From positions 140,652 to 204,651 of the IMG/VR virus record IMGVR_UViG_3300035703_000010: a stretch of DNA of 64,000 nt, one strand, 5' to 3'. The notes beneath the pieces are model-generated. The model made no database searches, was not told where the DNA came from, and was given only the letters and a program-made list of their open reading frames with translations. The position numbers were made by a program, and so were the translations under genes. Shown here in pieces: positions 9,553-53,869 of the stretch; the stretch's first letter is position 1; each line of letters begins with the position of its first letter.

Positions 9553-9573
9553 GTTTATTGTCGAGTTGTTTGG

Positions 9574-9602
9574 AAAGGGCTCCGTGTGGAGCCCTTTTTC
9601 AT
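9574..9602 (+). terminator. Intrinsic terminator after the actin-like gene
   Basis: AAAGGGCTCC-GTGT-GGAGCCCTTT followed by T residues. Confidence 0.85.
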
Positions 9603-9660
9603 TTTAGAATCTTACTGGTGCAAAATATCTTGTCTTTAGGTTACAATATGAAAATAGGTA

Positions 9661-12354
9661 ATGACTACAAAAGTTCCTTCACGATTCGTAGGCCTTCACA
9701 GCCACTCGGGGTTTAGTACCTTTGATGGACTTGATTATCCGCAAGAACACATCGATTACGTTCTAGAGAACGGTATGGATGCCTGGTCGTTGACTGACCA
9801 TGGTCACATGAACGGATTCTGCCATGCATATCTTCATGCCGAGAAGATGAAAAAATCAGGTAAGAACTTCAAGTTCATTCCTGGCTGCGAGATGTACGTC
9901 CATCCTGATCTAAAACAATGGCAGATCGATCTCGATAAGTCGAGAGAAAAACCGATCAAGGACGAATCTATCCTCACACCCCTCGCTGCGATCGTTGACG
10001 GTAACGATGAAACGACTGACATCGGTACCGATGAAGCCGCATTGACCATCGAAAACGAGGAGGAAACAAAATCAGGCAAGTACAACGACCCGATCAAACG
10101 TCGGCATCATCTCGTTGTCCTACCGAAAACATCAATTGGCCTACAAAGGTTATTCCATCTAGTTTCTCGAGGTTATTTGGAGGGCTTCTATAGGTTCCCA
10201 CGAGTTGATTATGCGATGTTGAAGGAAGCCGCAAAGGGAGGTCATCTCATGATTTCAACAGCATGCCTAGGTGGTGTGCTGAGCTATGACGTCTTCTCAA
10301 AGGTTCAACGCGTCAAGTTCGATGACCTATCACACAAACTTCTTGATGATAGGAGCTTGCTTGAGTCAACCTTGCTTGAGATGGGTAACACATATGACAA
10401 ATTGGTTAATGCTGTAGGACGAGACAATGTTTGCCTTGAGCTACAATTCAACAAACTTCCAGCCCAACATCTTGTTAACCGCGCAATTCTTGAATTTGCG
10501 AAGAAGAATTCATTGACTGATCGACTCGTTGTAACTTGCGATTCTCATTATTCTCGTCCAGACAACTGGAAAGAGCGTGAGATCTACAAGAAGCTAGGAT
10601 GGCTTAATTACCAAAACTTCGATCCGAACATGCTGCCGAAGTCGAAGGACGATCTGAAGTGCGAGTTGTATCCAAAGAACGCACCTCAGGTCTGGGATTC
10701 CTACCTGTCCACGTCTGAAGACATGTCATTCTATGATGATGATGTTGTTCGTGAAGCAATCGAGCGGACTCATGACATCGTCCACAATGAAATCGGCGAT
10801 ATCCATCCTGATAAGGAGATGAAGCTACCATCCTACGTCATCCCTGAAGGATTCACTGAAGATAAAGCATTGGTCGATGCATGTAAGAAAGGTCTCATTT
10901 GGCGAGGGCTCGATGACAAGCCTGAGTACATCGAACGTATCAAGTATGAGCTATCGATCATCAAAGGTAAGAAGTTCTCACGCTACTTCTTGACGATGAA
11001 GGCGATCATGGATTTGGCACGAGAACATATGTTGATCGGGCCAGGTCGCGGATCTGCTGCAGGTTCTCTCGTTGCTTATGTTCTTGGTGTTACTAACCTT
11101 GACCCTATTGAATACGACTTATCATTTGAACGCTTCCTTAACCCATCTCGACAAGGCGCTCCTGATATCGATTCTGACATTGGAGATCGCGATAAACTAA
11201 TCGAGCTCATGCGCGAAAACTTTGGTAATAACAATGTTATCCCAATTTCTAACTACAATACTTTTAAGTTAAAGAGCCTCATTAAAGACATCGCGCGGTT
11301 CTACAACATCCCATTTGAAGAAGTCAATGCAGCCTTAGCTCCCGTTGAAGATGACGTAAAGAAAGAGGTCTTTAAGCCAGGAGTTGATAAGAATCTTTTC
11401 GTCTTGACTTATGAAGATGCGATGAAGTATTCAAAGTCGATGCAAGACTTCGTCGCAGCGCATCCAGAGGTTGCAGAACCTATCGAGATCTTATTCAAAC
11501 AAAACCGATCTCTCGGCCGACATGCGGGTGGCGTCATCGTGTCGGAGAACGTTGCAGAGAGGATGCCTCTTATTCTTGCTCGTGGCGAACCTCAAACCCC
11601 ATGGGTCGAAGGTATGCACTATAAACACCTAGAAGAGTTCGGCTGGATCAAATTCGATCTACTAGGTCTTGAAACCCTGCGCATTATCGAACGAGCTATC
11701 TACCTGATTCTGCAACGTCGAGAAGGTGTAGCAAATCCAACATTTAAGGATGTGAAGGCTTGGTTCGACAAGCATATGGATCCTAAGAATATCGATCTCA
11801 ATGATCAAAGGGTGTATGAATACGTTTATCATGAGGGACGATTTGCTGGTGTGTTCCAGTGTACGCAACCTGGTGCTCAACGATTGTTCACTAAGGCAAA
11901 GCCTCGCAGCATCATCGACATTGCAACTTTGACATCGATCTATCGTCCTGGTCCTCTAGCGGCCAATGTCGATAAGATCTATATCGGCGCCAAGAACGAA
12001 CCTGATAAGATCGATTACCAGCACCCTTTGATCAAGAAGGTGCTTGAGTCTACATACGGATGTTTACATGGATCAACTGTTATTACAACTGATATTGGAG
12101 ATATTACGATTGAAAAAATCGTAGAAGATCAGTTAGTCGGAACAAAATTGCCATCTTTTAACGAAGAATCTTGCGAGATTGAACAAGACGAAATTGTTGC
12201 TGCAGTTTGCACTGGCGTTCAAGAGACTCTAACGATTGAACTTGAAGATGGAAAAACTATTCGTTTAACATCAGATCATAGAGTGTACACAACTAGAGGC
12301 TGGGTCGAGGCTGGAGATTTGACTGCAGAAGACGAAATTTTTGGAATTGAATAG
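9661..12354 (+). CDS. dnaE: DNA polymerase III alpha subunit, N-terminal fragment (800 aa) fused to a split intein N-part
   Basis: PHP domain LHSHS..STFDG, LTDHG; GPGRGSAAGSLVAY; catalytic PDIDSD; HAGG; KFDLLGL; extein ends at ..LESTYG. Confidence 0.97.
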   Translation: MTTKVPSRFVGLHSHSGFSTFDGLDYPQEHIDYVLENGMDAWSLTDHGHMNGFCHAYLHAEKMKKSGKNFKFIPGCEMYVHPDLKQWQIDLDKSREKPIKDESILTPLAAIVDGNDETTDIGTDEAALTIENEEETKSGKYNDPIKRRHHLVVLPKTSIGLQRLFHLVSRGYLEGFYRFPRVDYAMLKEAAKGGHLMISTACLGGVLSYDVFSKVQRVKFDDLSHKLLDDRSLLESTLLEMGNTYDKLVNAVGRDNVCLELQFNKLPAQHLVNRAILEFAKKNSLTDRLVVTCDSHYSRPDNWKEREIYKKLGWLNYQNFDPNMLPKSKDDLKCELYPKNAPQVWDSYLSTSEDMSFYDDDVVREAIERTHDIVHNEIGDIHPDKEMKLPSYVIPEGFTEDKALVDACKKGLIWRGLDDKPEYIERIKYELSIIKGKKFSRYFLTMKAIMDLAREHMLIGPGRGSAAGSLVAYVLGVTNLDPIEYDLSFERFLNPSRQGAPDIDSDIGDRDKLIELMRENFGNNNVIPISNYNTFKLKSLIKDIARFYNIPFEEVNAALAPVEDDVKKEVFKPGVDKNLFVLTYEDAMKYSKSMQDFVAAHPEVAEPIEILFKQNRSLGRHAGGVIVSENVAERMPLILARGEPQTPWVEGMHYKHLEEFGWIKFDLLGLETLRIIERAIYLILQRREGVANPTFKDVKAWFDKHMDPKNIDLNDQRVYEYVYHEGRFAGVFQCTQPGAQRLFTKAKPRSIIDIATLTSIYRPGPLAANVDKIYIGAKNEPDKIDYQHPLIKKVLESTYGCLHGSTVITTDIGDITIEKIVEDQLVGTKLPSFNEESCEIEQDEIVAAVCTGVQETLTIELEDGKTIRLTSDHRVYTTRGWVEAGDLTAEDEIFGIE
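12061..12351 (+). mobile_element. Split intein N-fragment (IntN, 97 aa)
   Basis: Begins CLHGST (block A, Cys1); block B TSDHRVYT.RGWVEAGDL; ends at a stop codon with no endonuclease domain. Confidence 0.93.
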
Positions 12355-12364
12355 ACATATGGGT

Positions 12365-12400
12365 ATATTTATCTTCCAAGAAAGAGGCTCTTGGAAGATG
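12365..12400 (+). promoter_or_regulatory. Putative late promoter (ATATTTA) plus start-codon-sequestering hairpin of the endonuclease gene
   Basis: ATATTTA 12365-12371; ATCTTCCAAGA (12371-12381) / TCTTGGAAGAT (12389-12399) perfect 11-bp stem covering the AT of ATG 12398. Confidence 0.75.
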
Positions 12401-13303
12401 AGAACTTGTGAATGTTGTGATAAAAAATTTGTTTATACAGGACCAAAAGGAAAAAATTATCCCGCAAAGACTTGCAGCGCAGAATGTTATAAGATATTAA
12501 GATCAAAAAAAATATCTCAATCAAACATCGATAGAAGGATACACGAAAAAGTAGAAAAGATTTGCGAAATTTGTGGTACGATAATCATAACAAATGATAC
12601 AGAGAACCAACGCATAACTTGCTCTAAGAAATGTCATTCTAAGAGATTATCGAAATTATACGCAGGAAGAAAAATAACTGAAGAGTGGCGACAAAATCAG
12701 AATAAGTCAAAGACTAAAGACAAAATTGTAAAGCATGGAGATTTTTCATGTGATAAATGTCAAAAACATTTTGATACCAACACTTCGCTTAGATCTCATA
12801 GATCATATTGTACTCCTGGAAATGAAGGTCATATTTGTTGCGAAATATGCAATAAGAGTTTTTCTACGCGAGGGTACAAGATCCATTTTAAGAGTCATGA
12901 TTTAATATGGAGATCGAAGACTACAAGTTCTCTTCAAAAATCTCTACTAACAAGAACGAAATGTCAGACTACCTCTAAATCAGAGTTAGAATTTTTTGAA
13001 AAATTAAAGTCTTTGTTGGGTGATGATGTTGTACACAAGTTTAAAATTGAAGGAATTACTCATGAATATGATTTTTTTGTTCCTTCAAAAAATGTTATCA
13101 TAGAGTTTGATGGTGATTATTGGCATGGCAATAAGAAGCTATACGAGTTATCTTCTAGAATGAAACGTCAATATCAGATTGATAAAGTGTGGAATGAAAA
13201 AGCAATAGCTGCTGGGTATAGAATAATAAGAGTTTGGGCATCAGAGTCAAAAGATTTTAAGTTGGAAAATTATGTTAACACCCTTGAAAATAAAGTCGAT
13301 TAA
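12398..13303 (+). CDS. Free-standing homing endonuclease: zinc fingers plus a Vsr/DUF559-like nuclease domain
   Basis: CxxC..TCS..C twice, CxxC..H..C and CxxC..H..H fingers, then SKSELEF..YDF..IIEFDGDYWH..G.RIIRVW; sits between the two intein halves; ATG 12398 preferred over 12341. Confidence 0.85.
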   Translation: MRTCECCDKKFVYTGPKGKNYPAKTCSAECYKILRSKKISQSNIDRRIHEKVEKICEICGTIIITNDTENQRITCSKKCHSKRLSKLYAGRKITEEWRQNQNKSKTKDKIVKHGDFSCDKCQKHFDTNTSLRSHRSYCTPGNEGHICCEICNKSFSTRGYKIHFKSHDLIWRSKTTSSLQKSLLTRTKCQTTSKSELEFFEKLKSLLGDDVVHKFKIEGITHEYDFFVPSKNVIIEFDGDYWHGNKKLYELSSRMKRQYQIDKVWNEKAIAAGYRIIRVWASESKDFKLENYVNTLENKVD

Positions 13304-13385
13304 ACGTGACGTACCTGCAAAAGTTTATGATATTCAAACCAAGAAAAATCATAACTTCATTGCAAATGGCTTCTTAGTTCATAAT
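13272..13385 (+). mobile_element. Split intein C-fragment (IntC, 38 aa)
   Basis: MLTPLKIKSIK..VYDIQT..NHNFIANGFLVHN followed by Cys+1 (TGC 13386-13388). Confidence 0.93.
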
Positions 13386-14555
13386 TGCATAATTTTTCAA
13401 GAGCAAACTATGAAGTTATGTTCTGTCGTTGCTGGGTTCCCGGAGGCTGAAACTGACACGATTCGTAGAAACATCATGAAGCGTTCTGCGTCTAAAAAGG
13501 ATGCAGCTGCTGCAGACGCGAAGAAGGCAAAAGAAGACTTCGTCGCCGGAGCGATGAAGAACGGTGTGCCTGAAAAGGTGGCTGATGAACTATACGAGAA
13601 GATTCTCTTCTTCTCTGGCTACGGCTTTAACGCTTCTCACGCAGTGTCTTACGCAATTGATTCATATTACTGTGCCTGGCTTCTCACCTACTTTGAGGAG
13701 GAATGGCTATGCGCTTACCTCGAGTCGATGTCAGGAAATGATGAAAAGCGTGCTAAGGCATTCTCTGAAGTCAAGGCATTAGGTTACAAGATCGTCAACA
13801 TCGACATCAACTATGCAACGAAGAGCTGGACGATCCTGGATGGTAAACGATTCATGCCTAGCTTCCTTTCATGTAAGGGTGTAGGGGAATCCGCAGTAGA
13901 AGAAATCATGGAAAATCGTCCGTATAAATCAGTGGAAGATATGTTATGGAATGAGGATGGGTCATGGAGGCATTCCAAGTTCAATAAACGTGCCTTGGAG
14001 GCCCTCATTGCAATTAAGGCATTTGATTCTCTTGATTGTATCGGTCATGATAGGACTTTCACCGGATACAAACACATGAGTGAGATCTTGATCAACAGAA
14101 ACGGCGATATCAAGAAACATACAAAGAAGAATCCGACTGCAGGAATCGAAGCATTCCGTGAAGCTTTGATCGATACGAAGAACATGGATGAATGGTCCAG
14201 ATCAGAATTGGTAGATAACAGCATAAAGTATCTCGGTTCATTCAACGCTGCGATGCTGATGCCAGAAGAGATCTTACAAAAGCTTGAGAGCAGAGGAGTC
14301 AAGTCTGTTGATGATTTATCTGAAAGCGACATCTATTGGTTTATCGTTTCTGATACAAAGCCTAAGAAAACGAAGACAGGAAAAAACTATTTGTTGTTAA
14401 CGATTACTGGGCTTGGAGGACAAAACCATAGGTTGTTCTGTTGGGGATGGAATGGCGAAACAGAAATTCCCAAGTACAGCGTTTGCCTTTCAGAAATCAC
14501 CGTAGATGGCTACGGTAATAAAACTTTCATGAGTAAGATTAAAGTCCTTGATTGA
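13272..14555 (+). CDS. dnaE: IntC fused to the DNA polymerase III alpha C-terminal fragment
   Basis: After the intein: CIIFQEQ, FSGYGFNASHAVSYA, helix-hairpin-helix KGVGESA, C-terminal OB-fold-like region. Confidence 0.95.
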   Translation: MLTPLKIKSIKRDVPAKVYDIQTKKNHNFIANGFLVHNCIIFQEQTMKLCSVVAGFPEAETDTIRRNIMKRSASKKDAAAADAKKAKEDFVAGAMKNGVPEKVADELYEKILFFSGYGFNASHAVSYAIDSYYCAWLLTYFEEEWLCAYLESMSGNDEKRAKAFSEVKALGYKIVNIDINYATKSWTILDGKRFMPSFLSCKGVGESAVEEIMENRPYKSVEDMLWNEDGSWRHSKFNKRALEALIAIKAFDSLDCIGHDRTFTGYKHMSEILINRNGDIKKHTKKNPTAGIEAFREALIDTKNMDEWSRSELVDNSIKYLGSFNAAMLMPEEILQKLESRGVKSVDDLSESDIYWFIVSDTKPKKTKTGKNYLLLTITGLGGQNHRLFCWGWNGETEIPKYSVCLSEITVDGYGNKTFMSKIKVLD

Positions 14556-28060: not shown

Positions 28061-28554
28061 TGTTGAAACGTGATGTGATTACAACTAAAATAGATTTAAA
28101 AGATTTTTTAAGCGGTGTAATTAAAGAATCTCTTCATTCAACGAAAAAAGTGATCAAAGAAGATGAAGAGAAAGAAGCTTTAAAAACTGGCGATGTGTCC
28201 GTAGAAGAAGTCATTGATAAGCTAAATACAATTAGAGCTGGAAAGTCTTTTAAAAGTGAAGAGATAAAATCTGCGATGGAATCTTATTTAAATGATTTAA
28301 ATTCTGCAGAGAAAACAGCTTTATTTGCATTTCTAAAAGGAATTTCTCAAGTTGTTGGTGGCGAGGTTGAAGGAAGCAAAGCCGTAGAACCTCAAGATTC
28401 ACCAGCAAATGTAAAAATGGAAAAGAAACCGTCTTCACAGAAAGTTACAGTTAAGCCAGTCGTAATTAAGAAACCAGAAGCGCAACCAGGTTCTGGCGCG
28501 AAAGGCAAAGAAGATACGACTCCTCCTGTGCCTATTGCACCCAAGAAAAAGTAA
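28057..28554 (+). CDS. Hypothetical protein with a leader-like motif
   Basis: LKDFLSGVIKES; Pro/Lys-rich tail. Confidence 0.55.
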   Translation: MMLKRDVITTKIDLKDFLSGVIKESLHSTKKVIKEDEEKEALKTGDVSVEEVIDKLNTIRAGKSFKSEEIKSAMESYLNDLNSAEKTALFAFLKGISQVVGGEVEGSKAVEPQDSPANVKMEKKPSSQKVTVKPVVIKKPEAQPGSGAKGKEDTTPPVPIAPKKK

Positions 28555-28576
28555 AGTCTAATAAACTTGGTGTATA

Positions 28577-28771
28577 TTGTTATACATGAATACCGATAGC
28601 ACCAAGTTTATTAAACTTCCTAATGGAAACACGTTAGAAGTTTCTATTTTTCCAGGTTTTTTAGAAAAAGTTAAAGAACATTTTTCTTTGAGTAATGTCG
28701 AAGAAGTCAATGATGATCATGTTAGAATGTATATTTATGGTGCATTTAAAAGCGCATTAGATAAGCAATAG
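28577..28771 (+). CDS. Small hypothetical protein
   Basis: 64 aa ORF filling an intergenic gap. Confidence 0.5.
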   Translation: MLYMNTDSTKFIKLPNGNTLEVSIFPGFLEKVKEHFSLSNVEEVNDDHVRMYIYGAFKSALDKQ

Positions 28772-28791
28772 CATGAAAGGAATCATTATAC

Positions 28792-29079
28792 ATGACCACT
28801 CCGATGTTGCAAGAGCTGATAAAACTTATTATCTTACAAGAATCTCGGATTAGAGAAGCTGAAATAACTGGTGATCGCAAGGTTCCATGGGGATCTGAAG
28901 ATCACGTTTCTGACTTAGAGAATCGCTGCGCAAATGTTGAGTATTGGAGAAATAAGTACCCAAGAGGTTCTGCAAAAAGAGATCATTACGGTACAGTTCT
29001 CAAACACCTAAAAAATGAATTAAAATCTGCAAAGAAAGCTGCGCAACATAGACAACTTCACGAAAAAGAAGAGGAATAA
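28792..29079 (+). CDS. Small hypothetical protein with leader motif
   Basis: MLQELIKLIILQES..REAE. Confidence 0.55.
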   Translation: MTTPMLQELIKLIILQESRIREAEITGDRKVPWGSEDHVSDLENRCANVEYWRNKYPRGSAKRDHYGTVLKHLKNELKSAKKAAQHRQLHEKEEE

Positions 29080-39020: not shown

Positions 39021-39024
39021 AAAA

Positions 39025-39058
39025 TCCATCACCTATGTGTTATCATATAGGTGATGGA
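39025..39058 (+). promoter_or_regulatory. Hairpin sequestering the RBS and start of the SpoU gene
   Basis: TCCATCACCTAT (39025-39036) / ATAGGTGATGGA (39047-39058) perfect 12-bp inverted repeat. Confidence 0.7.
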
Positions 39059-39635
39059 CTCGTTAGAAATCAAGCATGATCAAGAAAGCCCTTATTCTCT
39101 ATGGGCTAGAAACGTTATTGATGAATTTAAAAACCTGACAAATGATGAAATTTGTAAGCGAATTCAAGAACGTTCAAACGGATTTGCTGTTCTTATGACA
39201 CATGTTAATGGAGACTTTAACATTGGAACAGTTCTAAGGTCTGCAAACTCGCATGGAGTTAAAGACTTTTTCTACTATGGTCGTAAGAAATTTGATCGTA
39301 GAGGATGTGTAGGGGTTCATAACTATACTCAAATGCAATTTTTAAGAGATCTTGATGAAGTTATCAAGATCAAAAACGACTATTGTTTTGTCGCTTTAGA
39401 GAACAATATTGATGGTGTCGTATCATTACCAGATTTTGATTGGAATTTAAGTAAACCACCTTGCATTATCGTAGGAGAAGAATGCAACGGTATTCCAAAA
39501 GAAATTCTTGATCTTTGTGATGCGTTTGTAGAAATTCCTAGTTTTGGATCTGTAAGAAGCATGAATGTCGGTTCTGCTTCTTCAATTGCGATGTATGATT
39601 ATGTAAGTAAAAAACGAAAGATTAAATCTCAGTAG
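39051..39635 (+). CDS. SpoU/TrmH-family RNA 2'-O-methyltransferase (SPOUT)
   Basis: FNIGTVLRSA, VGEECNGI, VEIPSFGSVRSMNVGSA. Confidence 0.93.
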   Translation: MMDSLEIKHDQESPYSLWARNVIDEFKNLTNDEICKRIQERSNGFAVLMTHVNGDFNIGTVLRSANSHGVKDFFYYGRKKFDRRGCVGVHNYTQMQFLRDLDEVIKIKNDYCFVALENNIDGVVSLPDFDWNLSKPPCIIVGEECNGIPKEILDLCDAFVEIPSFGSVRSMNVGSASSIAMYDYVSKKRKIKSQ

Positions 39636-39660: not shown

Positions 39661-40404
39661 TTATTTATCAAGAAATTTTCTTGTTACGCTAGGAAAATTT
39701 TTCTCAGCATATAAAATCCATGAATTTCTAATGTCTTCAATTGTTTTGTCAATCATTTGTTGATCATTTATCCCATGATTGATGAATGATCTTTCAATTT
39801 TTTGTAACATTTCATCTATGATCTCATAAAATGATTTTTTTTGTTTCTTTGACTGTTGTCTTGCTCCGGCAACAAATGCTGGTATTTCAGAAGGATCAGT
39901 ATAGTATTTTTTCTTTTTTTCTATGTCTTTTTTATCTTGCATCATTTCATATCCTGTCTGTATCGAAGAAACAGCTAATTCAGGACCTTGAGATGAATGT
40001 TCTAATTCATGTCTGATAGCGTTGTGTAGGTAAGGCTGAATCATTCTTAGATGAATAGGCATGAGCATTCCAGTAGTTGATTGAACCGTGATTGAAATGT
40101 TCAATTCATTTAATTGCCAGTCCCATGATGCTTCTGCTAAAGCTTTATCGTTCTTAGTATGAAGAACTTTAACGATCATACTTAATGAAATTTTTTCAGA
40201 AGTCTGTGGTGCAATATCATTGCTTATTTCTATAAGAAATTTTGCAATTCTAACAATGAAATTTCCTTCTTTCATTCTTGGAAGATCATTGATTTTTTCA
40301 ATAGAAGAAGCAAGTTTCTTCATTGCAATTCTACTGATCTTGCTAGCAAGAGAATCAAGCTTCGACTCTAAAAGTAAACGTCTAATTATCGACTCATAAA
40401 TCAT
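39661..40404 (-). CDS. HExxH-containing hypothetical protein with a leader-like start
   Basis: MIYESIIRRLLLES; IRHELEH; YY..PSEIPAF; start moved to ATG 40404. Confidence 0.55.
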   Translation of the reverse strand: MIYESIIRRLLLESKLDSLASKISRIAMKKLASSIEKINDLPRMKEGNFIVRIAKFLIEISNDIAPQTSEKISLSMIVKVLHTKNDKALAEASWDWQLNELNISITVQSTTGMLMPIHLRMIQPYLHNAIRHELEHSSQGPELAVSSIQTGYEMMQDKKDIEKKKKYYTDPSEIPAFVAGARQQSKKQKKSFYEIIDEMLQKIERSFINHGINDQQMIDKTIEDIRNSWILYAEKNFPSVTRKFLDK

Positions 40405-45131: not shown

Positions 45132-46655
45132 ATGGCAATCTTATCAATAAGAAACTTCGGCAATATACAAATATTGAGAGTTGATTCTAATCCAGAGGGT
45201 ATATCTGCTCCTACAAATTCACTTGCGACAGTATCCACTAGTCGAAACGTTTACAGAAACGTCGGAGGGACTAGCTGGCAATTATTGAATTCTGTTTCTA
45301 TATTACCTCCAGTTGTTCCGAAGCCAGGTTCCGGATCTGGTTCAGGTTCCGGAGGCGCACAAGGTGCTCAAGGAAGAGTTGGGCATCAAGGTCTTCAAGG
45401 CCTTCAAGGATATCAAGGAAGCCAAGGTACTATGGGCACACAAGGTGTTCAAGGTGCACAAGGCGCTTTTGGGTATGGACCTCAAGGAAATAGAGGTCCT
45501 CAAGGCCTTCAAGGCGTCCAAGGTGATGATGGTGTCCAAGGACCTCAAGGTGTTCCAGGATCTCAAGGAGCAACTGGTATTGGAGCTCAAGGATATCAAG
45601 GCCGACCTGGAAATAAAGGAGAAGATGCAACTGAACCTGGTCCTCAAGGTTATCAAGGTCCTCAAGGTAATACAGGACCTGCAGGAACGTCAGGAACTCA
45701 AGGCCTTCAAGGAGCTCAAGGCGTTCAAGGAGCTCAAGGAAGAGTAGGCCCTAACGGGTCTATTGGTCCTCAGGGTCTTCAAGGTGCCCAAGGACGACAA
45801 GGATCAGGCGGAATCGGTCAACAAGGTTCACAAGGATATGATGGTGCGCAAGGTAGATCTGGATCAGCTGGATCTCAAGGTACTCAAGGCGCTCAAGGAC
45901 ATCCTGGATCTGACGAAATTGGAGCTCAAGGTGCTCAAGGAGTTCAAAGCGTAGTTGCAGGCCCTCGAGGATATGCTGGATTAATTGGCCCACAAGGTGG
46001 GATAGGCCCACAAGGCGATACTGGAGCTCAAGGATACGGAATACCAGGTCCTCAAGGTGACGTTGGTGCTCAAGGGCATCAAGGTAGAATCGGTTCGAAT
46101 GGGTTATCAGGAAATACTGGAGATTCTAACGGGTCAGCTTTGATTCTAGTTGAAGCAAAACAAATCAGCACTGGAGTTCAAACAGTAACATTCGAAAATC
46201 TAGATGGAGATTCTGATAGAATTTATTTTATTAGAGGAAGAGTGTTAAGACCAGCAGGATCTGCAGGAACTACATTTACTTATTCAGTTCGTCCTAATGG
46301 ATTAACAACTAATTTAGCTTATATAAGCTACGGTGGATATTATAGCACCGCTGCAGGATCAAACGCTATCTCAACCAGCGCAGGATCTAGTGGGTATTTG
46401 ATAGGTAGCAGCACTTCTACAACAAGATTTGATCTTCAGATGTGGATTTCTGCTGAAAAAACGTTGCCTAGACTCTTCGACATCGCTATTAGCAGAAGAG
46501 TTTTTGATGGATCAAACCAACAATTTGATGTTTGGAGAAGCGGGGTTCGTTGGAATGAAACTACAACGAATTTAACATCAATAGAAATTAACTGTGATAG
46601 ATCTGGCGGTCTTGCTGCTGGAACTGAGCTTTACCTTTATAAATTAGTATGCTGA
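45132..46655 (+). CDS. Collagen-like fibre protein 1 (Gly-X-Gln)
   Basis: Long G-X-Y run dominated by GAQ/GPQ; shared N-domain (LRVD..P.G..NVGGTSW) and C-domain. Confidence 0.88.
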   Translation: MAILSIRNFGNIQILRVDSNPEGISAPTNSLATVSTSRNVYRNVGGTSWQLLNSVSILPPVVPKPGSGSGSGSGGAQGAQGRVGHQGLQGLQGYQGSQGTMGTQGVQGAQGAFGYGPQGNRGPQGLQGVQGDDGVQGPQGVPGSQGATGIGAQGYQGRPGNKGEDATEPGPQGYQGPQGNTGPAGTSGTQGLQGAQGVQGAQGRVGPNGSIGPQGLQGAQGRQGSGGIGQQGSQGYDGAQGRSGSAGSQGTQGAQGHPGSDEIGAQGAQGVQSVVAGPRGYAGLIGPQGGIGPQGDTGAQGYGIPGPQGDVGAQGHQGRIGSNGLSGNTGDSNGSALILVEAKQISTGVQTVTFENLDGDSDRIYFIRGRVLRPAGSAGTTFTYSVRPNGLTTNLAYISYGGYYSTAAGSNAISTSAGSSGYLIGSSTSTTRFDLQMWISAEKTLPRLFDIAISRRVFDGSNQQFDVWRSGVRWNETTTNLTSIEINCDRSGGLAAGTELYLYKLVC

Positions 46656-49150
46656 TGAAAGGAACATGATATGGCTGTTTTATTAAGAAAAAAATTTGGC
46701 ATCATAGACTTGTTAAGAGTTGATGCTGTTCCTGATGGAATAACGGCTCCTGTTAATTCATTGGCAACGTTGTCGACTAATGGAAGCATCTATAAAAACG
46801 TAGGAGGGACTTCATGGCAATTAGTGAGTTCTTCAACGTTACTTCTTCCTTCTAATGATGAAGGTGGACAAGAAGGAGGCGGAGGAGCGGGTTCTCAAGG
46901 CGCTCAAGGAGCAAGAGGCGTACAAGGTGCTCAAGGTGCTCAAGGACCAGTCGGAAATGAAGGTTCAAAAGGAACTTCTGGATTAGGTGGGCCAGGAGGT
47001 GATTCTGGTTCCGGAGCGCAAGGTTTACAAGGGCCTCAAGGATTATTAGGACCACAAGGTCGTCCTGGGATGGTCGGCGCGCAAGGACATCAAGGAGTCC
47101 AAGGAGCAAACGGCGATACTACCCAACAAGGGCCGCAAGGAAATCCTGGAATCAAAGGTGCAGATGGTTCAGATAGCATTGGGTCAATTGGCCCGCAAGG
47201 GTTGCCTGGATCGCAAGGACCTCAAGGACAAAGTTATGCTGGTTATGCTGGACATAGAGGCATGTCAGGAGATACTGGTCCTCAGGGATCTTCTAATAAT
47301 TCTCCAGGATTAACTGGACATACTGGATCACCAGGGCTTCCTGGAGATGGTGTACAAGGACCAGCAGGAAGCCCTGGTGATCCAGGGCCTCAAGGCGAAC
47401 CTGGTAATTCTGGATCTAGAGGTCATCAAGGAGCCCAGGGTATTCAAGGAAATGGAATCCAAGGGCAACAAGGAGCTCAAGGGGATAGAGGACCTCAAGG
47501 AACTATAGGGGTCATAGGGTCGCAAGGATCAATCGGCCCACAGGGCATAATAGGATCTCAAGGAGCTCAAGGTCCAATACTTCAAGGCGCTCAAGGTGTT
47601 CAAGGAAACGTTGGAGCTCAAGGTGATGTTGGAAATCAAGGATCAGCAGGATCTTCAGGAGTTCCAAATAGCGGATTGATATTGATAGAAAGCAAGTATG
47701 TTACTGACTCTGCAGCTTCATCTTTAACATTTTCAGATTTAGATGGAGATGTCGAAAAGAGTTACCTTCTAGTGTATAGATTATATGTTGAAGGATCTTC
47801 CTCAACGTTGTTCAATATTGATCTTAGACCTAACGGACAAACGACAGATATTTCAGGCGTTTACAGAACATCATATTCTTCAACGACGACAAACGGAAGT
47901 TTGTCTTCTCCATTGATCACTTCCGTTAGAGGAACTGGGTATGCTTTCGGAACATTTAGAATTTCAGGAAAAACAGGAATTCCTAGGTTCCTTTTTTCAA
48001 ACTATGTAGGTTATTCTCCTGCTCTTTCTGCTTTCTTTTCAGCCGAAAATGCGGTCTACTGGAATGAAACGACAACAAACTTGACTTCTCTAGTCGTTTT
48101 TGGTTCAAGTTCAGGGGTAGAAAGCTCATGTATAGGAGTTGGTAGCGAGTTTCATCTTTACAAATATGAGGTAGCATAATGTCAGTCTTATCTAGAAGAA
48201 GTTTTGGTAACATTGAATTATTAAGAGTTAATTCAAACCCAGATGGATCTGTAAGTTCTACCGTCGGATCTCTAGCAATAGTTGCATCCACTGGAATTAC
48301 TTACAAAAACGTAGGAGGAACTAGCTGGATAGCGACAAACTCTTCTGGTGTCGGAGGGTCAGGTGCACAAGGTGCGCAAGGAGCACAAGGTTTCATCGGA
48401 CTTCCTGGTGACAGAGGGACTCAAGGAGTTCAAGGTGTTCAAGGTGACGTCGGTTCTCAAGGAGCTCAAGGTGATACAGGAAGCGGTGCTCAAGGCGTTC
48501 AAGGAGACATAGGCCCTCAAGGGGCTCAAGGAATTAGTCCAACAGGAGCCCAAGGCGCTAGAGGATATCAAGGAAATGATGGCTCATATTCACCTCCAGA
48601 GAACATGAGAGGACCACAAGGCGTTCAAGGAGCTCAAGGAAGTTCTGGAGTAAGCCAAAGAGGAACTCAAGGTGTGATTGGGCAAACCGGTCCACAAGGC
48701 GATCCATCTGATGGAGAAATTGGCGCGCAGGGAGCTCAAGGGCTTCCTGGATTTCAAGGCGCTCAGGGATTACCTGGAGAATCTTCGAACGTTCAAGGTC
48801 CTCAAGGTTCTCAAGGCGCTCAAGGATATCAAGGATATGCAGATGGTCCAATGGGTGCCCAAGGCACTCAAGGTTCGCAAGGATCTCCTGGTGCAGCTGG
48901 GCCTCAAGGATATCAAGGCTATCAAGGGTTCGGAGGCGTAGTTGGCCCGCAAGGGCACCAGGGAGCATCAGGCCCACAAGGATATCAAGGTGCTCAAGGT
49001 GTACAAGGACTTACTGGACCTGATGGAAATCCAGGATTCCAAGGGTATCAAGGTCCAGAAGGAGTACAAGGTCCTCAAGGATTACAGGGGCATCAAGGAG
49101 CACAAGGCGTCCAAGGAACAATAGGGTTACAAGGAGTACAAGGATCTGGG
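45350..49150 (+). repeat. Three blocks of 9-nt periodic coding repeats (..CAAGG..)
   Basis: Recurrent GCTCAAGG/CCTCAAGG/TTCAAGG from Gly-X-Gln codons at about 45350-46130, 46890-47660 and 48360-49150. Confidence 0.85.
46671..48179 (+). CDS. Collagen-like fibre protein 2
   Basis: Same tripartite architecture. Confidence 0.88.
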   Translation: MAVLLRKKFGIIDLLRVDAVPDGITAPVNSLATLSTNGSIYKNVGGTSWQLVSSSTLLLPSNDEGGQEGGGGAGSQGAQGARGVQGAQGAQGPVGNEGSKGTSGLGGPGGDSGSGAQGLQGPQGLLGPQGRPGMVGAQGHQGVQGANGDTTQQGPQGNPGIKGADGSDSIGSIGPQGLPGSQGPQGQSYAGYAGHRGMSGDTGPQGSSNNSPGLTGHTGSPGLPGDGVQGPAGSPGDPGPQGEPGNSGSRGHQGAQGIQGNGIQGQQGAQGDRGPQGTIGVIGSQGSIGPQGIIGSQGAQGPILQGAQGVQGNVGAQGDVGNQGSAGSSGVPNSGLILIESKYVTDSAASSLTFSDLDGDVEKSYLLVYRLYVEGSSSTLFNIDLRPNGQTTDISGVYRTSYSSTTTNGSLSSPLITSVRGTGYAFGTFRISGKTGIPRFLFSNYVGYSPALSAFFSAENAVYWNETTTNLTSLVVFGSSSGVESSCIGVGSEFHLYKYEVA

Positions 49151-49645
49151 TTTTCTGACCAGGACTTAGTTTTATTAGAAAGCATATACGTTACTGGATC
49201 TGCGGCATCTTCAGTTACGTTTTCTAACTTAGATGGAAACACGGATAGAATGTATCTCATGGTCTACACAATAAAAGTTGGTGGCCCTTCAACGGGAGTC
49301 AACTATGACATTTCGATAAGGCCAAACAATTTAACCACAAATCAAGTTAGCTTCTTTAACGTAGCTTCTTCTGCAGGAATAGGACGTGGTTATTATTCTC
49401 CTATATTATTATCTAGAAACGCAAAAGGTACGACGCTGTTCGGAATGGTCGAAATAGCTGCGCAAACATCAGCGCAAAGAATATTCTCTATTAGATACAC
49501 TGCAACAACAGCAGTTACTGGCACGGCTTTTGGACATTGGAATGAAACTTCTACAAATTTGACTTCATTAGTCATCACGTCGGGTACATCCAGCACTTTA
49601 GACGTTGGTAGCGAATTCCACCTGTACAAGTATGCCACTGCATGA
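48179..49645 (+). CDS. Collagen-like fibre protein 3
   Basis: Same tripartite architecture; start overlaps the previous stop. Confidence 0.88.
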   Translation: MSVLSRRSFGNIELLRVNSNPDGSVSSTVGSLAIVASTGITYKNVGGTSWIATNSSGVGGSGAQGAQGAQGFIGLPGDRGTQGVQGVQGDVGSQGAQGDTGSGAQGVQGDIGPQGAQGISPTGAQGARGYQGNDGSYSPPENMRGPQGVQGAQGSSGVSQRGTQGVIGQTGPQGDPSDGEIGAQGAQGLPGFQGAQGLPGESSNVQGPQGSQGAQGYQGYADGPMGAQGTQGSQGSPGAAGPQGYQGYQGFGGVVGPQGHQGASGPQGYQGAQGVQGLTGPDGNPGFQGYQGPEGVQGPQGLQGHQGAQGVQGTIGLQGVQGSGFSDQDLVLLESIYVTGSAASSVTFSNLDGNTDRMYLMVYTIKVGGPSTGVNYDISIRPNNLTTNQVSFFNVASSAGIGRGYYSPILLSRNAKGTTLFGMVEIAAQTSAQRIFSIRYTATTAVTGTAFGHWNETSTNLTSLVITSGTSSTLDVGSEFHLYKYATA

Positions 49646-50137: not shown

Positions 50138-50410
50138 ATGGATGAAGCTTTGCATCCTGGTCTTCGTTTTTGTGTTGGAGACATCGTCATTCCGTCTAAA
50201 CGATCTTATCCAATTTTGCTTAGATCAGGGCCATACGAAAAAATTTCTAATTGGGAATCATGTCCATCATGGGTTTATGGTACGACTGCTGTCATTGTCG
50301 ATATAAAAATTGATATGCAAAGCATAGGAGAAGTCATGGTAAAGATCATGACTCCTACAGCGACGGGGTGGACTGATTGGTGGAATTTGTCTCACTGCTT
50401 AGACATGTGA
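50138..50410 (+). CDS. Small SH3-like hypothetical protein
   Basis: FCVGDIVI..AVIV..VKIMT..GW; ATAATTA 5 nt upstream. Confidence 0.55.
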   Translation: MDEALHPGLRFCVGDIVIPSKRSYPILLRSGPYEKISNWESCPSWVYGTTAVIVDIKIDMQSIGEVMVKIMTPTATGWTDWWNLSHCLDM

Positions 50411-52051: not shown

Positions 52052-52275
52052 TAAACTACCTTTGATAACTCGCTTGAAAGAAAAGGACCTTCTATTAAAT
52101 CTTCAAAAAGAACATAATGATTCCAACAATAACTTTCAGAAACATTTTCTACATGTTTACTAGGATAATTGTTTGATGGTTTCGAAGACACAACAATACC
52201 ACATTTAGGTTTAAAGATATGATATACTAAGTCTCCGTTGTTTATTTTGCTTAACAAATTATACCTTAGAATCAT
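52051..52275 (-). CDS. Small hypothetical protein
   Basis: NGDLVYH..GIVV; coupled. Confidence 0.45.
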   Translation of the reverse strand: MILRYNLLSKINNGDLVYHIFKPKCGIVVSSKPSNNYPSKHVENVSESYCWNHYVLFEDLIEGPFLSSELSKVV

Positions 52276-53869
52276 TTAAAACTACGGCGTCTAAAGTCAT
52301 GAAAAGTTTTGCTACAGAAGTTGAATTTTTCAATGCTGTCTTAGTCACTTTTGCTGGATCAATAATTCCTGCTGAAATTAAATTGATAAACTTTCCTGTA
52401 GATGCATCATATCCTAGTCTTTGTTCTTTGTTTCTTGCCATTTCTTCTTCAACGACGTCAGCAGACTTATCTGAATTTTCAACAATTCTTCTTAAAGGCG
52501 CCTTACAAGCCTTAAGAACAACTTCTATACCAGCAAGAATATCTCTATCATAATCATTCTGCAATAGAACTGTCTTTGCTTCTTCTGCTGCGTAAAAAAG
52601 AGCTGAACCGCCGCCTGGAACAATTCCATCTTCAGCTGCTGCTCTTGTTGCATGTAAAGCATCTTCAATTCGATACTTTCTTTCAATCATTTCAATTTCT
52701 GTTGCACCACCGACCTTAATGATAGCAACACCAGAAGCTAATCTCGCAATTCTCATTTTTAAAATTGAAAGTTCTTCTTGGCTTAGCGTAATATCAGCCG
52801 ATCTGTTTCTTAGATCTTCTACATAAGAACTTACGTTTTCTTGAGTTGATTCGACACCAACAATAGTCGTTGATTTTGCATCAACGATAACTTTTTTCAT
52901 TTTGCCGAGTTCATTTAATGTCGTTTTTTCAAGAGAAGTTCCGTTTGTGCTCGAAATTAAAGTTGCTCCAGTTAGGACGCAAATGTCATTCAAGTAATCT
53001 GTTTTTGATGGACCGAATCCAGGAGCTTTGATTGCAATCACTTGAAGCTGAGTTTTTACTCTATTCAAAACCAATCCTTGTAGAGCTTCTCCTTCTACAT
53101 CATCAGCGATGATTAATAGAGGTTTTCTTGCTTCTAAAGTTCTTTCTAGAACTGGAAGGATGTCTTTAATCGTCGAGATTTTCTTGTCAGTAACTAGAAC
53201 ATATGCATCGTTATAACATGCATGCATTTTTTCATTATTTGTTACGAAATAAGGCGATAGATACCCTCTATCAAATTGCATGCCGTCGACGACATCAAGA
53301 GCAGTTGTCGTTCCTTTTGCGTCCTCTACAGTAATGATTCCGTCTCTTCCAACCTTTTCCATTGCCGAAGCGAGGATTTCTCCTATTTTTTCATCACCGT
53401 TTGCACTGATCGTGCCAATTTGTTTAATTTTTTCTGATGATTCTACTGGAGTTGACATTACTGACAAAAAGCTAGTTATCGTTTTAGTAGCTATGTCTAA
53501 TCCTTCGCATAACTTTTTAGAGTTATACCCAGCATCTAGAAGTTTCATTCCTTCTTTTACTAACGCGTGAGTAAGAACAGTAGAAGTAGTTGTACCATCG
53601 CCAGCAACATCATTGGTTTGAGAAGCTGCTTCTCTAAGTAGCTGAGCTCCCATCATTTCAAGAGGATCTGATAGTTTTACTGATTTGCTTACAGTAACTC
53701 CATCTTTAGTGACGATAGGAGAATTATTGCCGTTTTGGATTAGAACAGTCTTTCCGTTGGGTCCTAGCGTGCAGCTTACTGCTTCTGCAGCTAATCTCAA
53801 TCCATTATAAAGCTTTTTTCTTGCGTCTTTAGAAAAGACAATTCCTTCTACTTTAGTTTCAACATTCAT
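52259..53869 (-). CDS. groEL: Chaperonin GroEL (group I)
   Basis: TLGPNG, VTKDGVTV, AGDGTTTST, GMQFDRGYLSPYF, KVGGATE, VPGGG, GIIDPAKV; no GGM tail; start moved to ATG 53869. Confidence 0.97.
   Translation of the reverse strand: MNVETKVEGIVFSKDARKKLYNGLRLAAEAVSCTLGPNGKTVLIQNGNNSPIVTKDGVTVSKSVKLSDPLEMMGAQLLREAASQTNDVAGDGTTTSTVLTHALVKEGMKLLDAGYNSKKLCEGLDIATKTITSFLSVMSTPVESSEKIKQIGTISANGDEKIGEILASAMEKVGRDGIITVEDAKGTTTALDVVDGMQFDRGYLSPYFVTNNEKMHACYNDAYVLVTDKKISTIKDILPVLERTLEARKPLLIIADDVEGEALQGLVLNRVKTQLQVIAIKAPGFGPSKTDYLNDICVLTGATLISSTNGTSLEKTTLNELGKMKKVIVDAKSTTIVGVESTQENVSSYVEDLRNRSADITLSQEELSILKMRIARLASGVAIIKVGGATEIEMIERKYRIEDALHATRAAAEDGIVPGGGSALFYAAEEAKTVLLQNDYDRDILAGIEVVLKACKAPLRRIVENSDKSADVVEEEMARNKEQRLGYDASTGKFINLISAGIIDPAKVTKTALKNSTSVAKLFMTLDAVVLNDSKV

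What the first reader, a model, noticed from the sequence alone, without database searches (positions are those of the whole stretch)
12365..12400. Endonuclease start codon locked in a hairpin directly behind a putative late promoter
Seen: a perfect 11-bp stem ATCTTCCAAGA/TCTTGGAAGAT with AAGAGGC in the loop covers the AT of ATG 12398, and ATATTTA abuts the 5' arm. Established: T4 I-TevI and related homing endonucleases are silenced on early read-through transcripts by such hairpins and are translated only from late promoters that start inside the 5' arm. Inference: dnaE read-through mRNA yields both polymerase halves but not the toxic nuclease, and a late transcript starting near 12376-12378 truncates the arm and frees the RBS. 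This also supports ATANNTA as the late promoter.
Basis: partly seen in the sequence, partly recalled or inferred. Interest (0 to 1): 0.75.

Follow-up and report, generated by a model that had tools for sequence, protein, structure and literature searches.

The report
Hairpin-gated homing endonuclease in split dnaE
A selfish nuclease gene that splits a phage DNA polymerase gene has its start codon buried in a conserved RNA hairpin directly behind a phage promoter motif. This is a new example of a control already known from phage T4, and its leader also copies the nuclease's own target site.

Summary
A perfect 11-bp stem (12371-12381 / 12389-12399, extendable to 14 bp) buries ATG 12398. GAGG sits in the loop and ATATTTA (12365-12371) abuts the 5' arm.

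The gene is a free-standing Vsr-like homing endonuclease between the two halves of a split intein in dnaE. Intein-less alleles exist.

Twenty metagenomic versions keep the hairpin: 95% of positions are paired, three pairs change on both sides, and G-U pairs are tolerated.

ATAnnTA is a real signal:
- It is 8.6-fold enriched upstream of genes here and 11.4-fold in a 59% GC relative.
- It is conserved before tail sheath genes in five phages.
- It lies about 12 nt before SD-less ATGs, which places the transcript start near 12377, inside the 5' arm.

The I-TevI-like reading is therefore well supported by computation, but no transcript data exist.

Caveats:
- The SD is not sequestered.
- Some relatives translate through the hairpin.
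- Late timing is inferred.

This feature class was already described for fractured genes (Dassa 2009), so this is a new member of a known kind.

One thing appears new: the leader copies the empty dnaE homing site, as the I-TevI operator does.

The parts
9573..9600 (+). Terminator-like hairpin with a T run (GGGCTCC-GTGT-GGAGCCC-TTTTT) upstream of dnaE. It implies that dnaE starts its own transcription unit.
   Evidence: Read directly; function not tested.
9661..12060 (+). N-extein of DNA polymerase III alpha (DnaE), ending ...STYG.
   Evidence: Pfam PHP, DNA_pol3_alpha and finger domains. Junction fixed by intein-less relatives and by the joint in run X2.
12061..12354 (+). N-terminal half of the split intein (CLHGST...FGIE) and its stop codon TAG 12352-12354.
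   Evidence: Sub-threshold Pfam Intein_splicing and HINT hits. It is absent, precisely, from alleles L081, L083, L084, L089 and L092.
12355..12382 (+). Leader stretch ACATATGGGTATATTTATCTTCCAAGAA, which resembles the uninterrupted dnaE homing site (ACNTAYGGN|TGYATHATHTTYCARGAR). The central 7 nt of the target are replaced by the heptamer.
   Evidence: A PWM of the leaders ranks the empty junction 1st to 8th of about 22,000 positions in six intein-less loci, always in the same register.
12365..12371 (+). ATATTTA, an instance of the ATAnnTA promoter-like heptamer. The inferred transcript start is near 12377 (12375-12378).
   Evidence: Conserved in the same register in the homologous elements.
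12368..12402 (+). RNA hairpin: 5' arm 12371-12381, loop 12382-12388 (SD GAGG 12384-12387), 3' arm 12389-12399. It extends to 14 bp, including G12400 of the AUG.
   Evidence: (covariation).
12398..13303 (+). Free-standing homing endonuclease, 301 aa: N-terminal CxxC repeats, tandem C2H2 zinc fingers (residues 116-168) and a C-terminal Vsr-like nuclease domain (EFDGDYWHGN).
   Evidence: PHROG homing or HNH endonuclease families. Zinc-finger matches. AF2 model whose best PDB matches are the I-Bth0305I catalytic domain and Vsr. Single copy in the genome.
13272..13385 (+). C-terminal half of the split intein (MLTPLK...LVHN). It overlaps the last 32 nt of the endonuclease gene.
13386..14555 (+). C-extein of DnaE, starting CIIFQEQTMKL.

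Best explanation
The 43-nt spacer between the intein-N stop and the endonuclease ATG is a two-part control element that travels with the mobile endonuclease. On mRNA that starts upstream and reads through dnaE, the 11-14 bp hairpin forms and holds the AUG and the SD-to-AUG spacer in a stem of about -17 kcal/mol. Ribosomes therefore initiate poorly, even though the SD is displayed in the loop. The heptamer ATATTTA that abuts the stem belongs to this phage group's own compact promoter class, ATAnnTA. This class has no -35 element, shows the same register as the T4 late box, and is probably read by a phage-encoded sigma factor. It drives tail sheath and tail tube genes, among others. Transcripts from it would begin about 6 nt downstream, near 12377. 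They would carry only the last 4-5 nt of the 5' arm and so leave the AUG free. The endonuclease would then be made mainly when that promoter class is active, most likely late, while dnaE mRNA can supply both polymerase halves without it. Shown here: the structure, its covariation, the motif's genome-wide behaviour and its fixed register to the stem. Inferred: the transcript start, the timing and the effect on translation.
For: Structure. Rarity. Conservation: in 20 distinct homologous elements, 95% of cells are paired against 56% or less when the partner is slid. Three of 11 pairs show changes on both sides (UA/CG, UA/UG/CG, AU/GC), and U-G occurs in 8 sequences, which argues for RNA rather than a DNA palindrome. 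All 20 fold at -10.5 to -19.4 kcal/mol with the AUG in the stem. When started at the 6th nt after the heptamer, 19 of the 20 drop to -0.3 to -7.2 with the AUG unpaired; for L111 the script misplaced the start (window). Motif: ATA..TA is enriched 8.6-fold in the 60 nt upstream of genes, against 0.8-3.0-fold for 31 composition-matched patterns, and it is the rarest of the 32 genome-wide. ATATTTA is the top 7-mer. Unambiguous hits run 29 sense to 12 antisense. No flanking or -35 conservation. The motif lies before three tail sheath paralogues, the tail tube, the terminase operon and a structural protein. It is absent before the helicase, PhoH and GroEL genes. Footprint: the heptamer is kept before sheath orthologues in four other phages, including two of much higher GC content. 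Replication in a 340-kb, 59% GC relative: 27 of 67 genomic copies lie within 60 nt upstream of genes (11.4-fold), and spacing again peaks at 12. Start calibration: 14 genes have the motif 9-13 nt (mode 12) before the first ATG, 11 of them with no SD call. This matches the register of the T4 late box, recalled from knowledge of T4 as TATAAATA at -13 to -6 and not verified here. The endonuclease's heptamer follows each phage's dialect: ATATTTA is the commonest in this genome and ATACCTA the second commonest in the relative. There are no indels between heptamer and stem in 20 elements, while loops vary. Sigma-like phage protein. No + strand terminator between dnaE-N and the endonuclease. Precedent: I-TevI, I-TevII, I-TevIII, segB and Aeh1 mobE (PMC2988022), and hairpins with late-promoter boxes before endonucleases of fractured genes, including DnaE loci (PMC2677866).
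Against: There is no transcript 5' end, no time course and no translation measurement. The genome is an uncultured, roughly 60% complete metagenomic phage record, and the only RNA-labelled run holds next to none of this stretch and is itself marked by read laying as probably DNA. The SD is in the loop and unpaired, so the block depends on AUG and spacer pairing alone, unlike I-TevI and mobE. Six of 20 elements do not fit ATAnnTA: four have G and one has T at position 1, one of them with a 100% identical protein, and L111 and L112 deviate elsewhere. In six or seven homologues the intein-N frame runs through the hairpin and stops +5 to +56 nt (one at +131) after the ATG, so upstream ribosomes would melt it. 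The major head and portal genes lack the motif, and portal has TATAAT, so 'late' is not proven. The heptamer could be conserved for another reason, since the leader as a whole mimics the homing site. The sigma assignment is weak (E 1e-5; Foldseek E 0.02-0.3; mean pLDDT 63).
Confidence: 0.6

Rival explanations
1. The hairpin is a constitutive attenuator or coupling device, with no internal promoter. It keeps independent initiation low at all times. The endonuclease is made only at a trickle, or when ribosomes finishing or traversing the intein-N frame open the stem (translational coupling). The heptamer is conserved for another reason.
For: In L107, L110, L113, L115, L005, L007 and perhaps L009, the upstream frame reads through the hairpin and ends +5 to +56 nt (L009: +131) after the ATG. 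L107 has the overlap ATGAATAA, typical of termination-reinitiation. L002, L004 and L108 have no hairpin, and their stop lies 4 nt before the ATG. Six of 20 heptamers are imperfect. The SD in the loop would allow standby binding.
Against: In the window and ten other elements the stop lies 44-46 nt (32-35 in a few) before the ATG, and 13 nt or more before the base of the stem. That is outside the reach of a terminating ribosome (footprint size from general knowledge). The heptamer is an independently validated upstream signal in two genomes, it follows each phage's preferred variant, and it keeps a fixed register to the stem. Homologues without a hairpin (L008, L117) still carry ATACTTA before the gene.
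Confidence: 0.2
2. The leader is an operator. The endonuclease binds its own 5' region on DNA because that region mimics the empty dnaE homing site, and so represses the overlapping promoter, as I-TevI does. This can coexist with the hairpin mechanism. Alone, it would make the hairpin secondary.
For: A PWM of nine leaders ranks the TYG|CIIFQE junction of intein-less relatives 1st (L081, L083), 2nd, 3rd, 6th and 8th of about 22,000 positions, always at offset -11. Both halves score independently. L113's leader is 27/33 identical to its own C-extein start, with 0 of 3000 shuffles reaching that score. L115 gives 0 of 1000 and the window 9 of 1000. The non-pairing upstream part (ACATAYGG, resembling the N-extein end) is kept among elements whose proteins are only 51-87% identical. 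The centre of the target is replaced, which might prevent cleavage. I-TevI precedent: PMC2988022.
Against: Binding is untested and the target of this enzyme is unknown. L109/L003, whose intein sits at another dnaE site, keeps the IIFQE-type leader and shows no likeness to its own site. That fits an inherited remnant better than a tuned operator. G-U-tolerant covariation shows selection at the RNA level.
Confidence: 0.3
3. The repeat has no regulatory role for the endonuclease. It is a neutral remnant of a target-site duplication, a DNA palindrome for a dimeric protein, an intrinsic terminator or an RNase III site.
For: The leader derives from, or mimics, the homing site, whose sequence is itself weakly self-complementary (TTTCA...TGGAA).
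Against: Compensatory changes and 95% pairing across elements whose proteins are down to 37% identical. U-G pairs do not fit a DNA palindrome. No U tract follows the stem, and the essential dnaE C-half lies downstream. At 11-14 bp the stem is short for RNase III (general knowledge). No Rfam family matches.
Confidence: 0.05

Closest known systems
Hairpins with late-promoter boxes before free-standing endonucleases of 'fractured genes' (Dassa, London, Stoddard, Pietrokovski 2009, PMC2677866)
   Same: The architecture matches: a host gene split by a split intein, a free-standing Vsr-like endonuclease between the halves, its 3' end overlapping the downstream half, and an RNA hairpin in its 5' leader. 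DnaE loci are among those described, and the paper made the same comparison with I-TevI and mobE.
   Different: The paper reports TATAAATA boxes inside 10 of the hairpins. Here the box is ATATTTA (class ATAnnTA), TATAAATA is rare in the genome (5 copies), and the box abuts the stem rather than lying within it. Three things are not in the parts of that paper read here: covariation, genome-wide validation of the motif, and likeness of the leader to the homing site. Its figures and supplements were not available.
T4 I-TevI (also I-TevII, I-TevIII, segB and Aeh1 mobE): late promoter placed so that late transcripts lack the inhibitory hairpin (PMC2988022)
   Same: An endonuclease gene embedded in an earlier transcription unit. 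A stable hairpin over the initiation region. A compact -10-only promoter whose inferred start lies within the 5' arm. For I-TevI, also a homing-site look-alike overlapping that promoter.
   Different: In T4 the RBS itself is sequestered. Here only the AUG and spacer are, and the SD sits in the loop. The host element is a split intein, not a group I intron, so the T4 rationale of protecting intron folding does not apply. The enzyme family is Vsr-like rather than GIY-YIG or HNH. Nothing is measured here.
T4-type late promoters read by gp55 (TATAAATA, no -35 element)
   Same: ATAnnTA is the T4 core ATAAATA with two free positions. The inferred register to the transcript start is the same, there is no -35 element, and it precedes tail genes. 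A sigma-like phage protein whose only PHROG hit is the gp55 family is encoded.
   Different: The consensus is looser. The candidate sigma has 250 aa, and its model resembles two-domain sigma-70-family factors rather than gp55 specifically. The phage replicates with DnaE, not a T4-type polymerase. No gp33 or gp45 counterpart was sought.

Membership tests
Fractured gene: split intein plus free-standing endonuclease (Dassa 2009) | Host gene interrupted exactly at an intein site, with N- and C-intein halves on separate reading frames | tested here: met
   Five intein-less relatives read ...TYG|CIIFQEQ... without a break, and run X2 carries a joint from 12059 to 13386. The intein starts with C, has TSDH, and ends HN followed by C. 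The Pfam intein hits are below the curated cut-off.
Fractured gene: split intein plus free-standing endonuclease (Dassa 2009) | Free-standing Vsr-like endonuclease between the halves, its 3' end overlapping the downstream half | tested here: met
   The AF2 model's best PDB matches are the I-Bth0305I catalytic domain (E 9e-4, TM 0.57 by target) and Vsr. The motif EFDGDYWHGN is invariant in 9 homologues. The overlap is 32 nt, 13272-13303.
Fractured gene: split intein plus free-standing endonuclease (Dassa 2009) | RNA hairpin in the endonuclease 5' leader | tested here: met
I-TevI/mobE-type temporal translational control | Stable structure sequesters the ribosome binding site on long transcripts | tested here: inconclusive
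   The AUG is paired with probability 0.99-1.00 on long leaders, but the SD GAGG is unpaired in the loop.
I-TevI/mobE-type temporal translational control | A promoter placed so that its transcripts lack the 5' arm | tested here: inconclusive
   The heptamer is validated as an upstream signal, and its spacing to SD-less ATGs puts the start near 12377. No 5' end has been mapped.
I-TevI/mobE-type temporal translational control | That promoter is late, and the surrounding unit is early or middle | not testable with these tools
   Indirect evidence only. The motif precedes tail sheath, tail tube and terminase genes and is absent before the helicase and PhoH, but it is also absent before the major head and portal genes.
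T4-type gp55 late promoter | Consensus TATAAATA | tested here: not met
   The box here is ATATTTA. TATAAATA occurs 5 times in 204 kb on both strands. The enriched class is ATAnnTA.
T4-type gp55 late promoter | A gp55-family sigma factor is encoded | tested here: inconclusive
   phrog_234 is the only PHROG hit of the 250-aa protein (E 1.2e-5). All 50 best Foldseek matches are sigma factors, but at E 0.02-0.3. T4 gp55 itself gives no match.
Intrinsic terminator | G+C-rich stem followed by a U tract | tested here: not met
   The stem has only 4 G-C pairs among its 11 perfect pairs and is followed by GAGAACUUGUG. The terminator scan does not list it.
I-TevI-type operator (homing-site mimic over the endonuclease's own promoter) | Leader DNA overlapping the promoter resembles the homing site | tested here: met
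   (rank 1-8 of about 22,000, fixed register).
I-TevI-type operator (homing-site mimic over the endonuclease's own promoter) | The endonuclease binds it and represses transcription | not testable with these tools
   No binding data. The case of L109 argues for caution.

The most novel reading that the evidence does not exclude
The endonuclease's leader is a maintained copy of the uninterrupted dnaE homing site (N-extein end plus C-extein start) in which the central 7 nt have been turned into the phage's promoter heptamer. One 28-nt stretch would then serve as promoter, as 5' arm of the translational lock, and as an uncleavable operator through which the enzyme represses itself. That would be an I-TevI-like triple control that arose independently in a Vsr-like endonuclease riding a split intein. 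It would also give a direct sequence read-out of the enzyme's recognition site.
Probability: 0.3. Interest if true: 0.6.

Novelty: new member of a known kind. Interest (0 to 1): 0.4.

Why it matters
The finding extends the T4 rule that selfish nucleases are kept off early messages by a hairpin and released by a late promoter. It now covers an uncultured group of freshwater jumbo phages with a different replication apparatus and a different promoter dialect, and it adds covariation evidence that earlier descriptions lacked.

As by-products it yields:
- a candidate promoter class, ATAnnTA, often giving leaderless messages, for this phage group;
- a candidate phage sigma factor;
- a likely recognition sequence for an uncharacterised Vsr-like homing endonuclease linked to a dnaE split intein.

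These may interest people who use split inteins and homing endonucleases as tools. It does not change the known picture of how such elements are regulated.

Tried and rejected
- A nucleotide search of the locus against deposited phages found nothing. The protein searches found only distant relatives.
- A home-made EM motif search of upstream regions returned only weak SD-like and AT-rich motifs. The composition-matched pattern test replaced it.
- The sigma-70-type scan found fewer sites than shuffles did: 18 against 26.7. TTGGAA-17-TATATT at 12341-12369 is one of them, but it is not conserved in relatives, so a host-type promoter here was rejected.
- Rfam gave no family.
- A covariance model of the element found no second copy in the genome, in intein-less relatives or in about 90 other endonuclease loci. 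The one weak hit (L020, E 0.72) lies inside a coding region and was dismissed.
- Sequencing runs gave no usable RNA. The single run labelled RNA-Seq holds only scraps of this stretch and is itself marked as probably DNA.
- T4 gp55 as a query, phrog_12791, and a PDB sequence search with the sigma-like protein all gave nothing.
- An early impression from one pairwise alignment, that the heptamer is not conserved, was withdrawn once 20 elements were available.
- The upstream ATG 12359 and TTG 12341 were rejected as starts.

Full report
THE OBSERVATION. ATCTTCCAAGA (12371-12381) and TCTTGGAAGAT (12389-12399) are perfectly complementary across the 7-nt loop AAGAGGC. RNAfold adds three pairs, two of them G-U, so all of AUG 12398-12400 is paired. 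The element alone folds at -17.0 kcal/mol. ATATTTA is at 12365-12371 and shares its last A with the stem. The genome is one 204,651-bp contig of 36% GC, and the window is its last 64 kb. It holds 14 perfect stems of 11 bp or more with short loops, against about one expected. Among 209 called genes this start region is the third most stable, and one of only three with such a stem over the start codon. The SD GAGG (12384-12387) lies in the loop.

WHAT THE LOCUS IS. ORF 9661-12354 is the N-part of DNA polymerase III alpha followed by an intein N-half. ORF 13272-14555 is an intein C-half followed by the rest of DnaE. Between them lies a 301-aa protein with CxxC repeats, two C2H2 zinc fingers and the motif EFDGDYWHGN. 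Its predicted fold is closest to the I-Bth0305I homing endonuclease catalytic domain and to Vsr. Five related viral contigs read ...TYG|CIIFQEQ... without interruption. One metagenome (run X2) contains both the interrupted allele and a contig that joins 12059 to 13386. This is therefore a 'fractured gene' in the sense of Dassa et al. 2009: a split intein with a free-standing Vsr-like endonuclease, whose 3' end overlaps the downstream half by 32 nt. The record is an uncultured IMG/VR phage estimated at about 60% complete. Relatives reach 340 kb.

THE HAIRPIN IS A SELECTED RNA STRUCTURE. Scans of viral and metagenomic contigs with the endonuclease gave about 20 distinct versions of the leader, from proteins 37-100% identical.
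- All place the ATG in the 3' arm of a 9-14 bp stem.
- On the alignment, 95% of cells form a standard pair, against 56% or less when the partner is slid.
- Three of the eleven pairs change on both sides (UA/CG, UA/UG/CG, AU/GC).
- U-G occurs in eight sequences.

Wobble tolerance speaks for RNA and not for a DNA palindrome. Loop length and sequence vary, but most loops keep an SD-like GGAG, GAGG or AAGG. A few family members lack the hairpin (L002/L004/L108, L008, L010, L117). A covariance model finds no other copy in this genome or in the intein-less relatives. No Rfam family matches.

THE HEPTAMER IS A REAL SIGNAL.
- ATATTTA is the most enriched 7-mer in upstream regions.
- ATA..TA is 8.6-fold enriched in the 60 nt before genes, against 0.8-3.0-fold for 31 composition-matched patterns. 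It is the rarest of the 32 in the genome as a whole.
- Unambiguous hits run 29 sense to 12 antisense.
- Nothing around it is conserved, so there is no -35 element.
- It precedes the three tail sheath paralogues, the tail tube, the terminase operon and a structural protein. It is missing before the helicase, PhoH and GroEL genes, but also before the major head and portal genes.
- Before the sheath orthologues of four other phages, two of them much richer in G+C and otherwise unalignable, a heptamer of this class sits at a similar distance.
- In the complete 340-kb, 59% GC relative, 27 of only 67 genomic copies lie within 60 nt upstream of genes, an 11.4-fold enrichment.

WHERE TRANSCRIPTS WOULD START. 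In both genomes the distance from motif to ATG peaks at 12 nt. Here 14 genes carry the motif 9-13 nt before the first ATG of the frame, 11 of them without any SD call. Read as leaderless messages, these put the start at the 6th nt after the motif. From my knowledge of T4, not verified here, that is the register of the T4 late box TATAAATA (-13 to -6). For the endonuclease this gives about 12377, within the 5' arm. The heptamer-to-stem register never varies among the 20 elements. The heptamer variant follows each phage's own preference: ATATTTA here, ATACCTA in the 59% GC relative.

A CANDIDATE SIGMA FACTOR. A 250-aa phage protein has the gp55 'late sigma' family as its only PHROG hit (E 1e-5). 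It has more than 1,500 unannotated, highly conserved homologues. The 50 best structural matches of its model are all sigma factors, though weakly.

FOLDING.
- On long leaders the AUG is paired with probability 0.99-1.00, while the SD is free.
- Starting at 12374-12377, the local stem shrinks to 5-8 pairs and AUG pairing falls to 0.24-0.40.
- Across the variants, starting at +6 lowers stability from between -10.5 and -19.4 to between -0.3 and -7.2 kcal/mol, and frees the AUG in 19 of the 20. For L111 the script misplaced the start.
- dnaE has a terminator-like hairpin with a T run (9573-9600) and a TACAAT box just upstream.
- No + strand terminator separates it from the endonuclease, so read-through is plausible.

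CAVEATS.
- Nothing about transcripts or translation is measured. The single RNA-labelled run holds next to none of this stretch and is marked as probably DNA.
- Unlike I-TevI and mobE, the SD is not sequestered.
- Six of 20 heptamers deviate from ATAnnTA, one of them in the element with an identical protein.
- In six or seven homologues the intein-N frame continues through the hairpin and stops +5 to +56 nt (one at +131) after the ATG. There, upstream ribosomes would open the stem, which suggests coupling in that subgroup.
- 'Late' rests on tail genes only.

AN UNEXPECTED FEATURE. The leader resembles the empty dnaE homing site. In the endonuclease frame the leaders read (I)LIFQEQ, like the C-extein CIIFQEQ.
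- A PWM of nine leaders (consensus TAACATACGGAATACTTATCTTTCAAGAA) was scanned over about 11-kb loci of six intein-less relatives on both strands. It ranks the TYG|C junction 1st, 1st, 2nd, 3rd, 6th and 8th of about 22,000 positions, always at the same offset.
- The part before the heptamer matches the N-extein end and the 5' arm matches TTYCARGAR, each on its own.
- L113's leader is 27/33 identical to its own C-extein start. None of 3000 shuffles reaches that score. For the window, 9 of 1000 do.
- The target's central TGCATYA is what the heptamer replaces.

This parallels the I-TevI operator, a homing-site look-alike over its late promoter (PMC2988022). Against a tuned operator: the element at a second dnaE site (L003/L109, VFQ|CTGQ) keeps the IIFQE-type leader and does not resemble its own site. 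Whether this is a maintained operator or an inherited remnant that was recruited as promoter and stem is open.

COMPARISON WITH WHAT IS KNOWN. The mechanism is established for T4 I-TevI, I-TevII, I-TevIII, segB and Aeh1 mobE, and for the T4 genes e, soc and others. Dassa et al. 2009 reported hairpins in 15 of 16 leaders of endonucleases in fractured genes, DnaE loci included. Ten of those hairpins carried TATAAATA, and the authors drew the same analogy. No later paper on the point was found. The present case is a new member of that kind. It has a different promoter dialect and an SD-in-loop geometry, and it adds covariation and genome-wide motif evidence. The homing-site likeness is not mentioned in the parts of that paper I could read.

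VERDICT. Novelty is low to moderate.

Noticed in passing
window 12355-12382: The endonuclease leader is a diverged copy or mimic of the uninterrupted dnaE homing site (N-extein end plus C-extein start), with the central 7 nt replaced by the promoter-like heptamer. This is reminiscent of the I-TevI operator.
   Followed up: partly
whole genome, e.g. window 39661-40404 (-), 50138-50410 (+), 54317-55210 (-), 59937-61874 (+): Fourteen genes carry ATAnnTA 9-13 nt (mode 12) before the first ATG of the frame, 11 of them without any SD call, which suggests a class of leaderless messages. The same peak at 12 nt appears in a 340-kb, 59% GC relative.
   Followed up: partly
outside the window: G000 28140-28892, minus strand (L178:10143-10892): A 250-aa protein with more than 1,500 highly conserved, unannotated homologues. 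Its only PHROG hit is the gp55 'late sigma' family, and all the best structural matches of its model are sigma factors. It is a candidate reader of ATAnnTA.
   Followed up: partly
window 12059/13386; run X2: One metagenome holds both the interrupted allele and a contig that joins 12059 to 13386. The intein-plus-endonuclease element is therefore polymorphic in a natural population.
   Followed up: yes
window 39024-39060: A 15-bp hairpin (TCCATCACCTATGTG / CATATAGGTGATGGA) buries the SD and ATG 39054 of a SpoU-type methylase gene. It is stronger than the endonuclease hairpin and no ATAnnTA lies nearby. An alternative start at 39077 is possible.
   Followed up: no
outside the window: G000 93719-93765 (L182:3719-3765): This is the strongest start-region hairpin in the genome (-29.4 kcal/mol). 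A heptamer ATATGTA lies in its loop, so a transcript from it would lack the whole 5' arm. The 70-aa GTG-started frame behind it is doubtful.
   Followed up: no
L099, L100, L102, L103 (stop 45 nt before the ATG); L107, L110, L113, L115, L005, L007: In four relatives the intein-N stop is in frame with the endonuclease ATG, with no further stop between them. In six others (possibly L009 as well) the intein-N frame runs through the hairpin and ends after the ATG, with ATGAATAA in L107. Different relatives may therefore use coupling or read-through.
   Followed up: partly
L003 / L109: The same endonuclease family, with the same type of leader, sits in a split intein at a second dnaE site (VFQ|CTGQGAQ). 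That site is uninterrupted in the window's own dnaE.
   Followed up: partly
window 9573-9663: dnaE is preceded by a terminator-like hairpin with a T run and by a TACAAT box ending 13 nt before its ATG, with no SD. dnaE itself may have a very short leader. ATAGGTA abuts its ATG.
   Followed up: no
outside the window: G000 102281-111697: Three tandem tail sheath paralogues of about 1,016-1,039 aa, each with its own ATAnnTA box. The arrangement is kept in related phages.
   Followed up: partly
window 52259-53869 (-) and G000 47967-49166: The phage encodes a full-length GroEL-like chaperonin and a second, shorter GroEL-like protein.
   Followed up: no
window 45132-49645: Three consecutive collagen-like tail fibre genes of about 490-507 aa each.
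   Followed up: no
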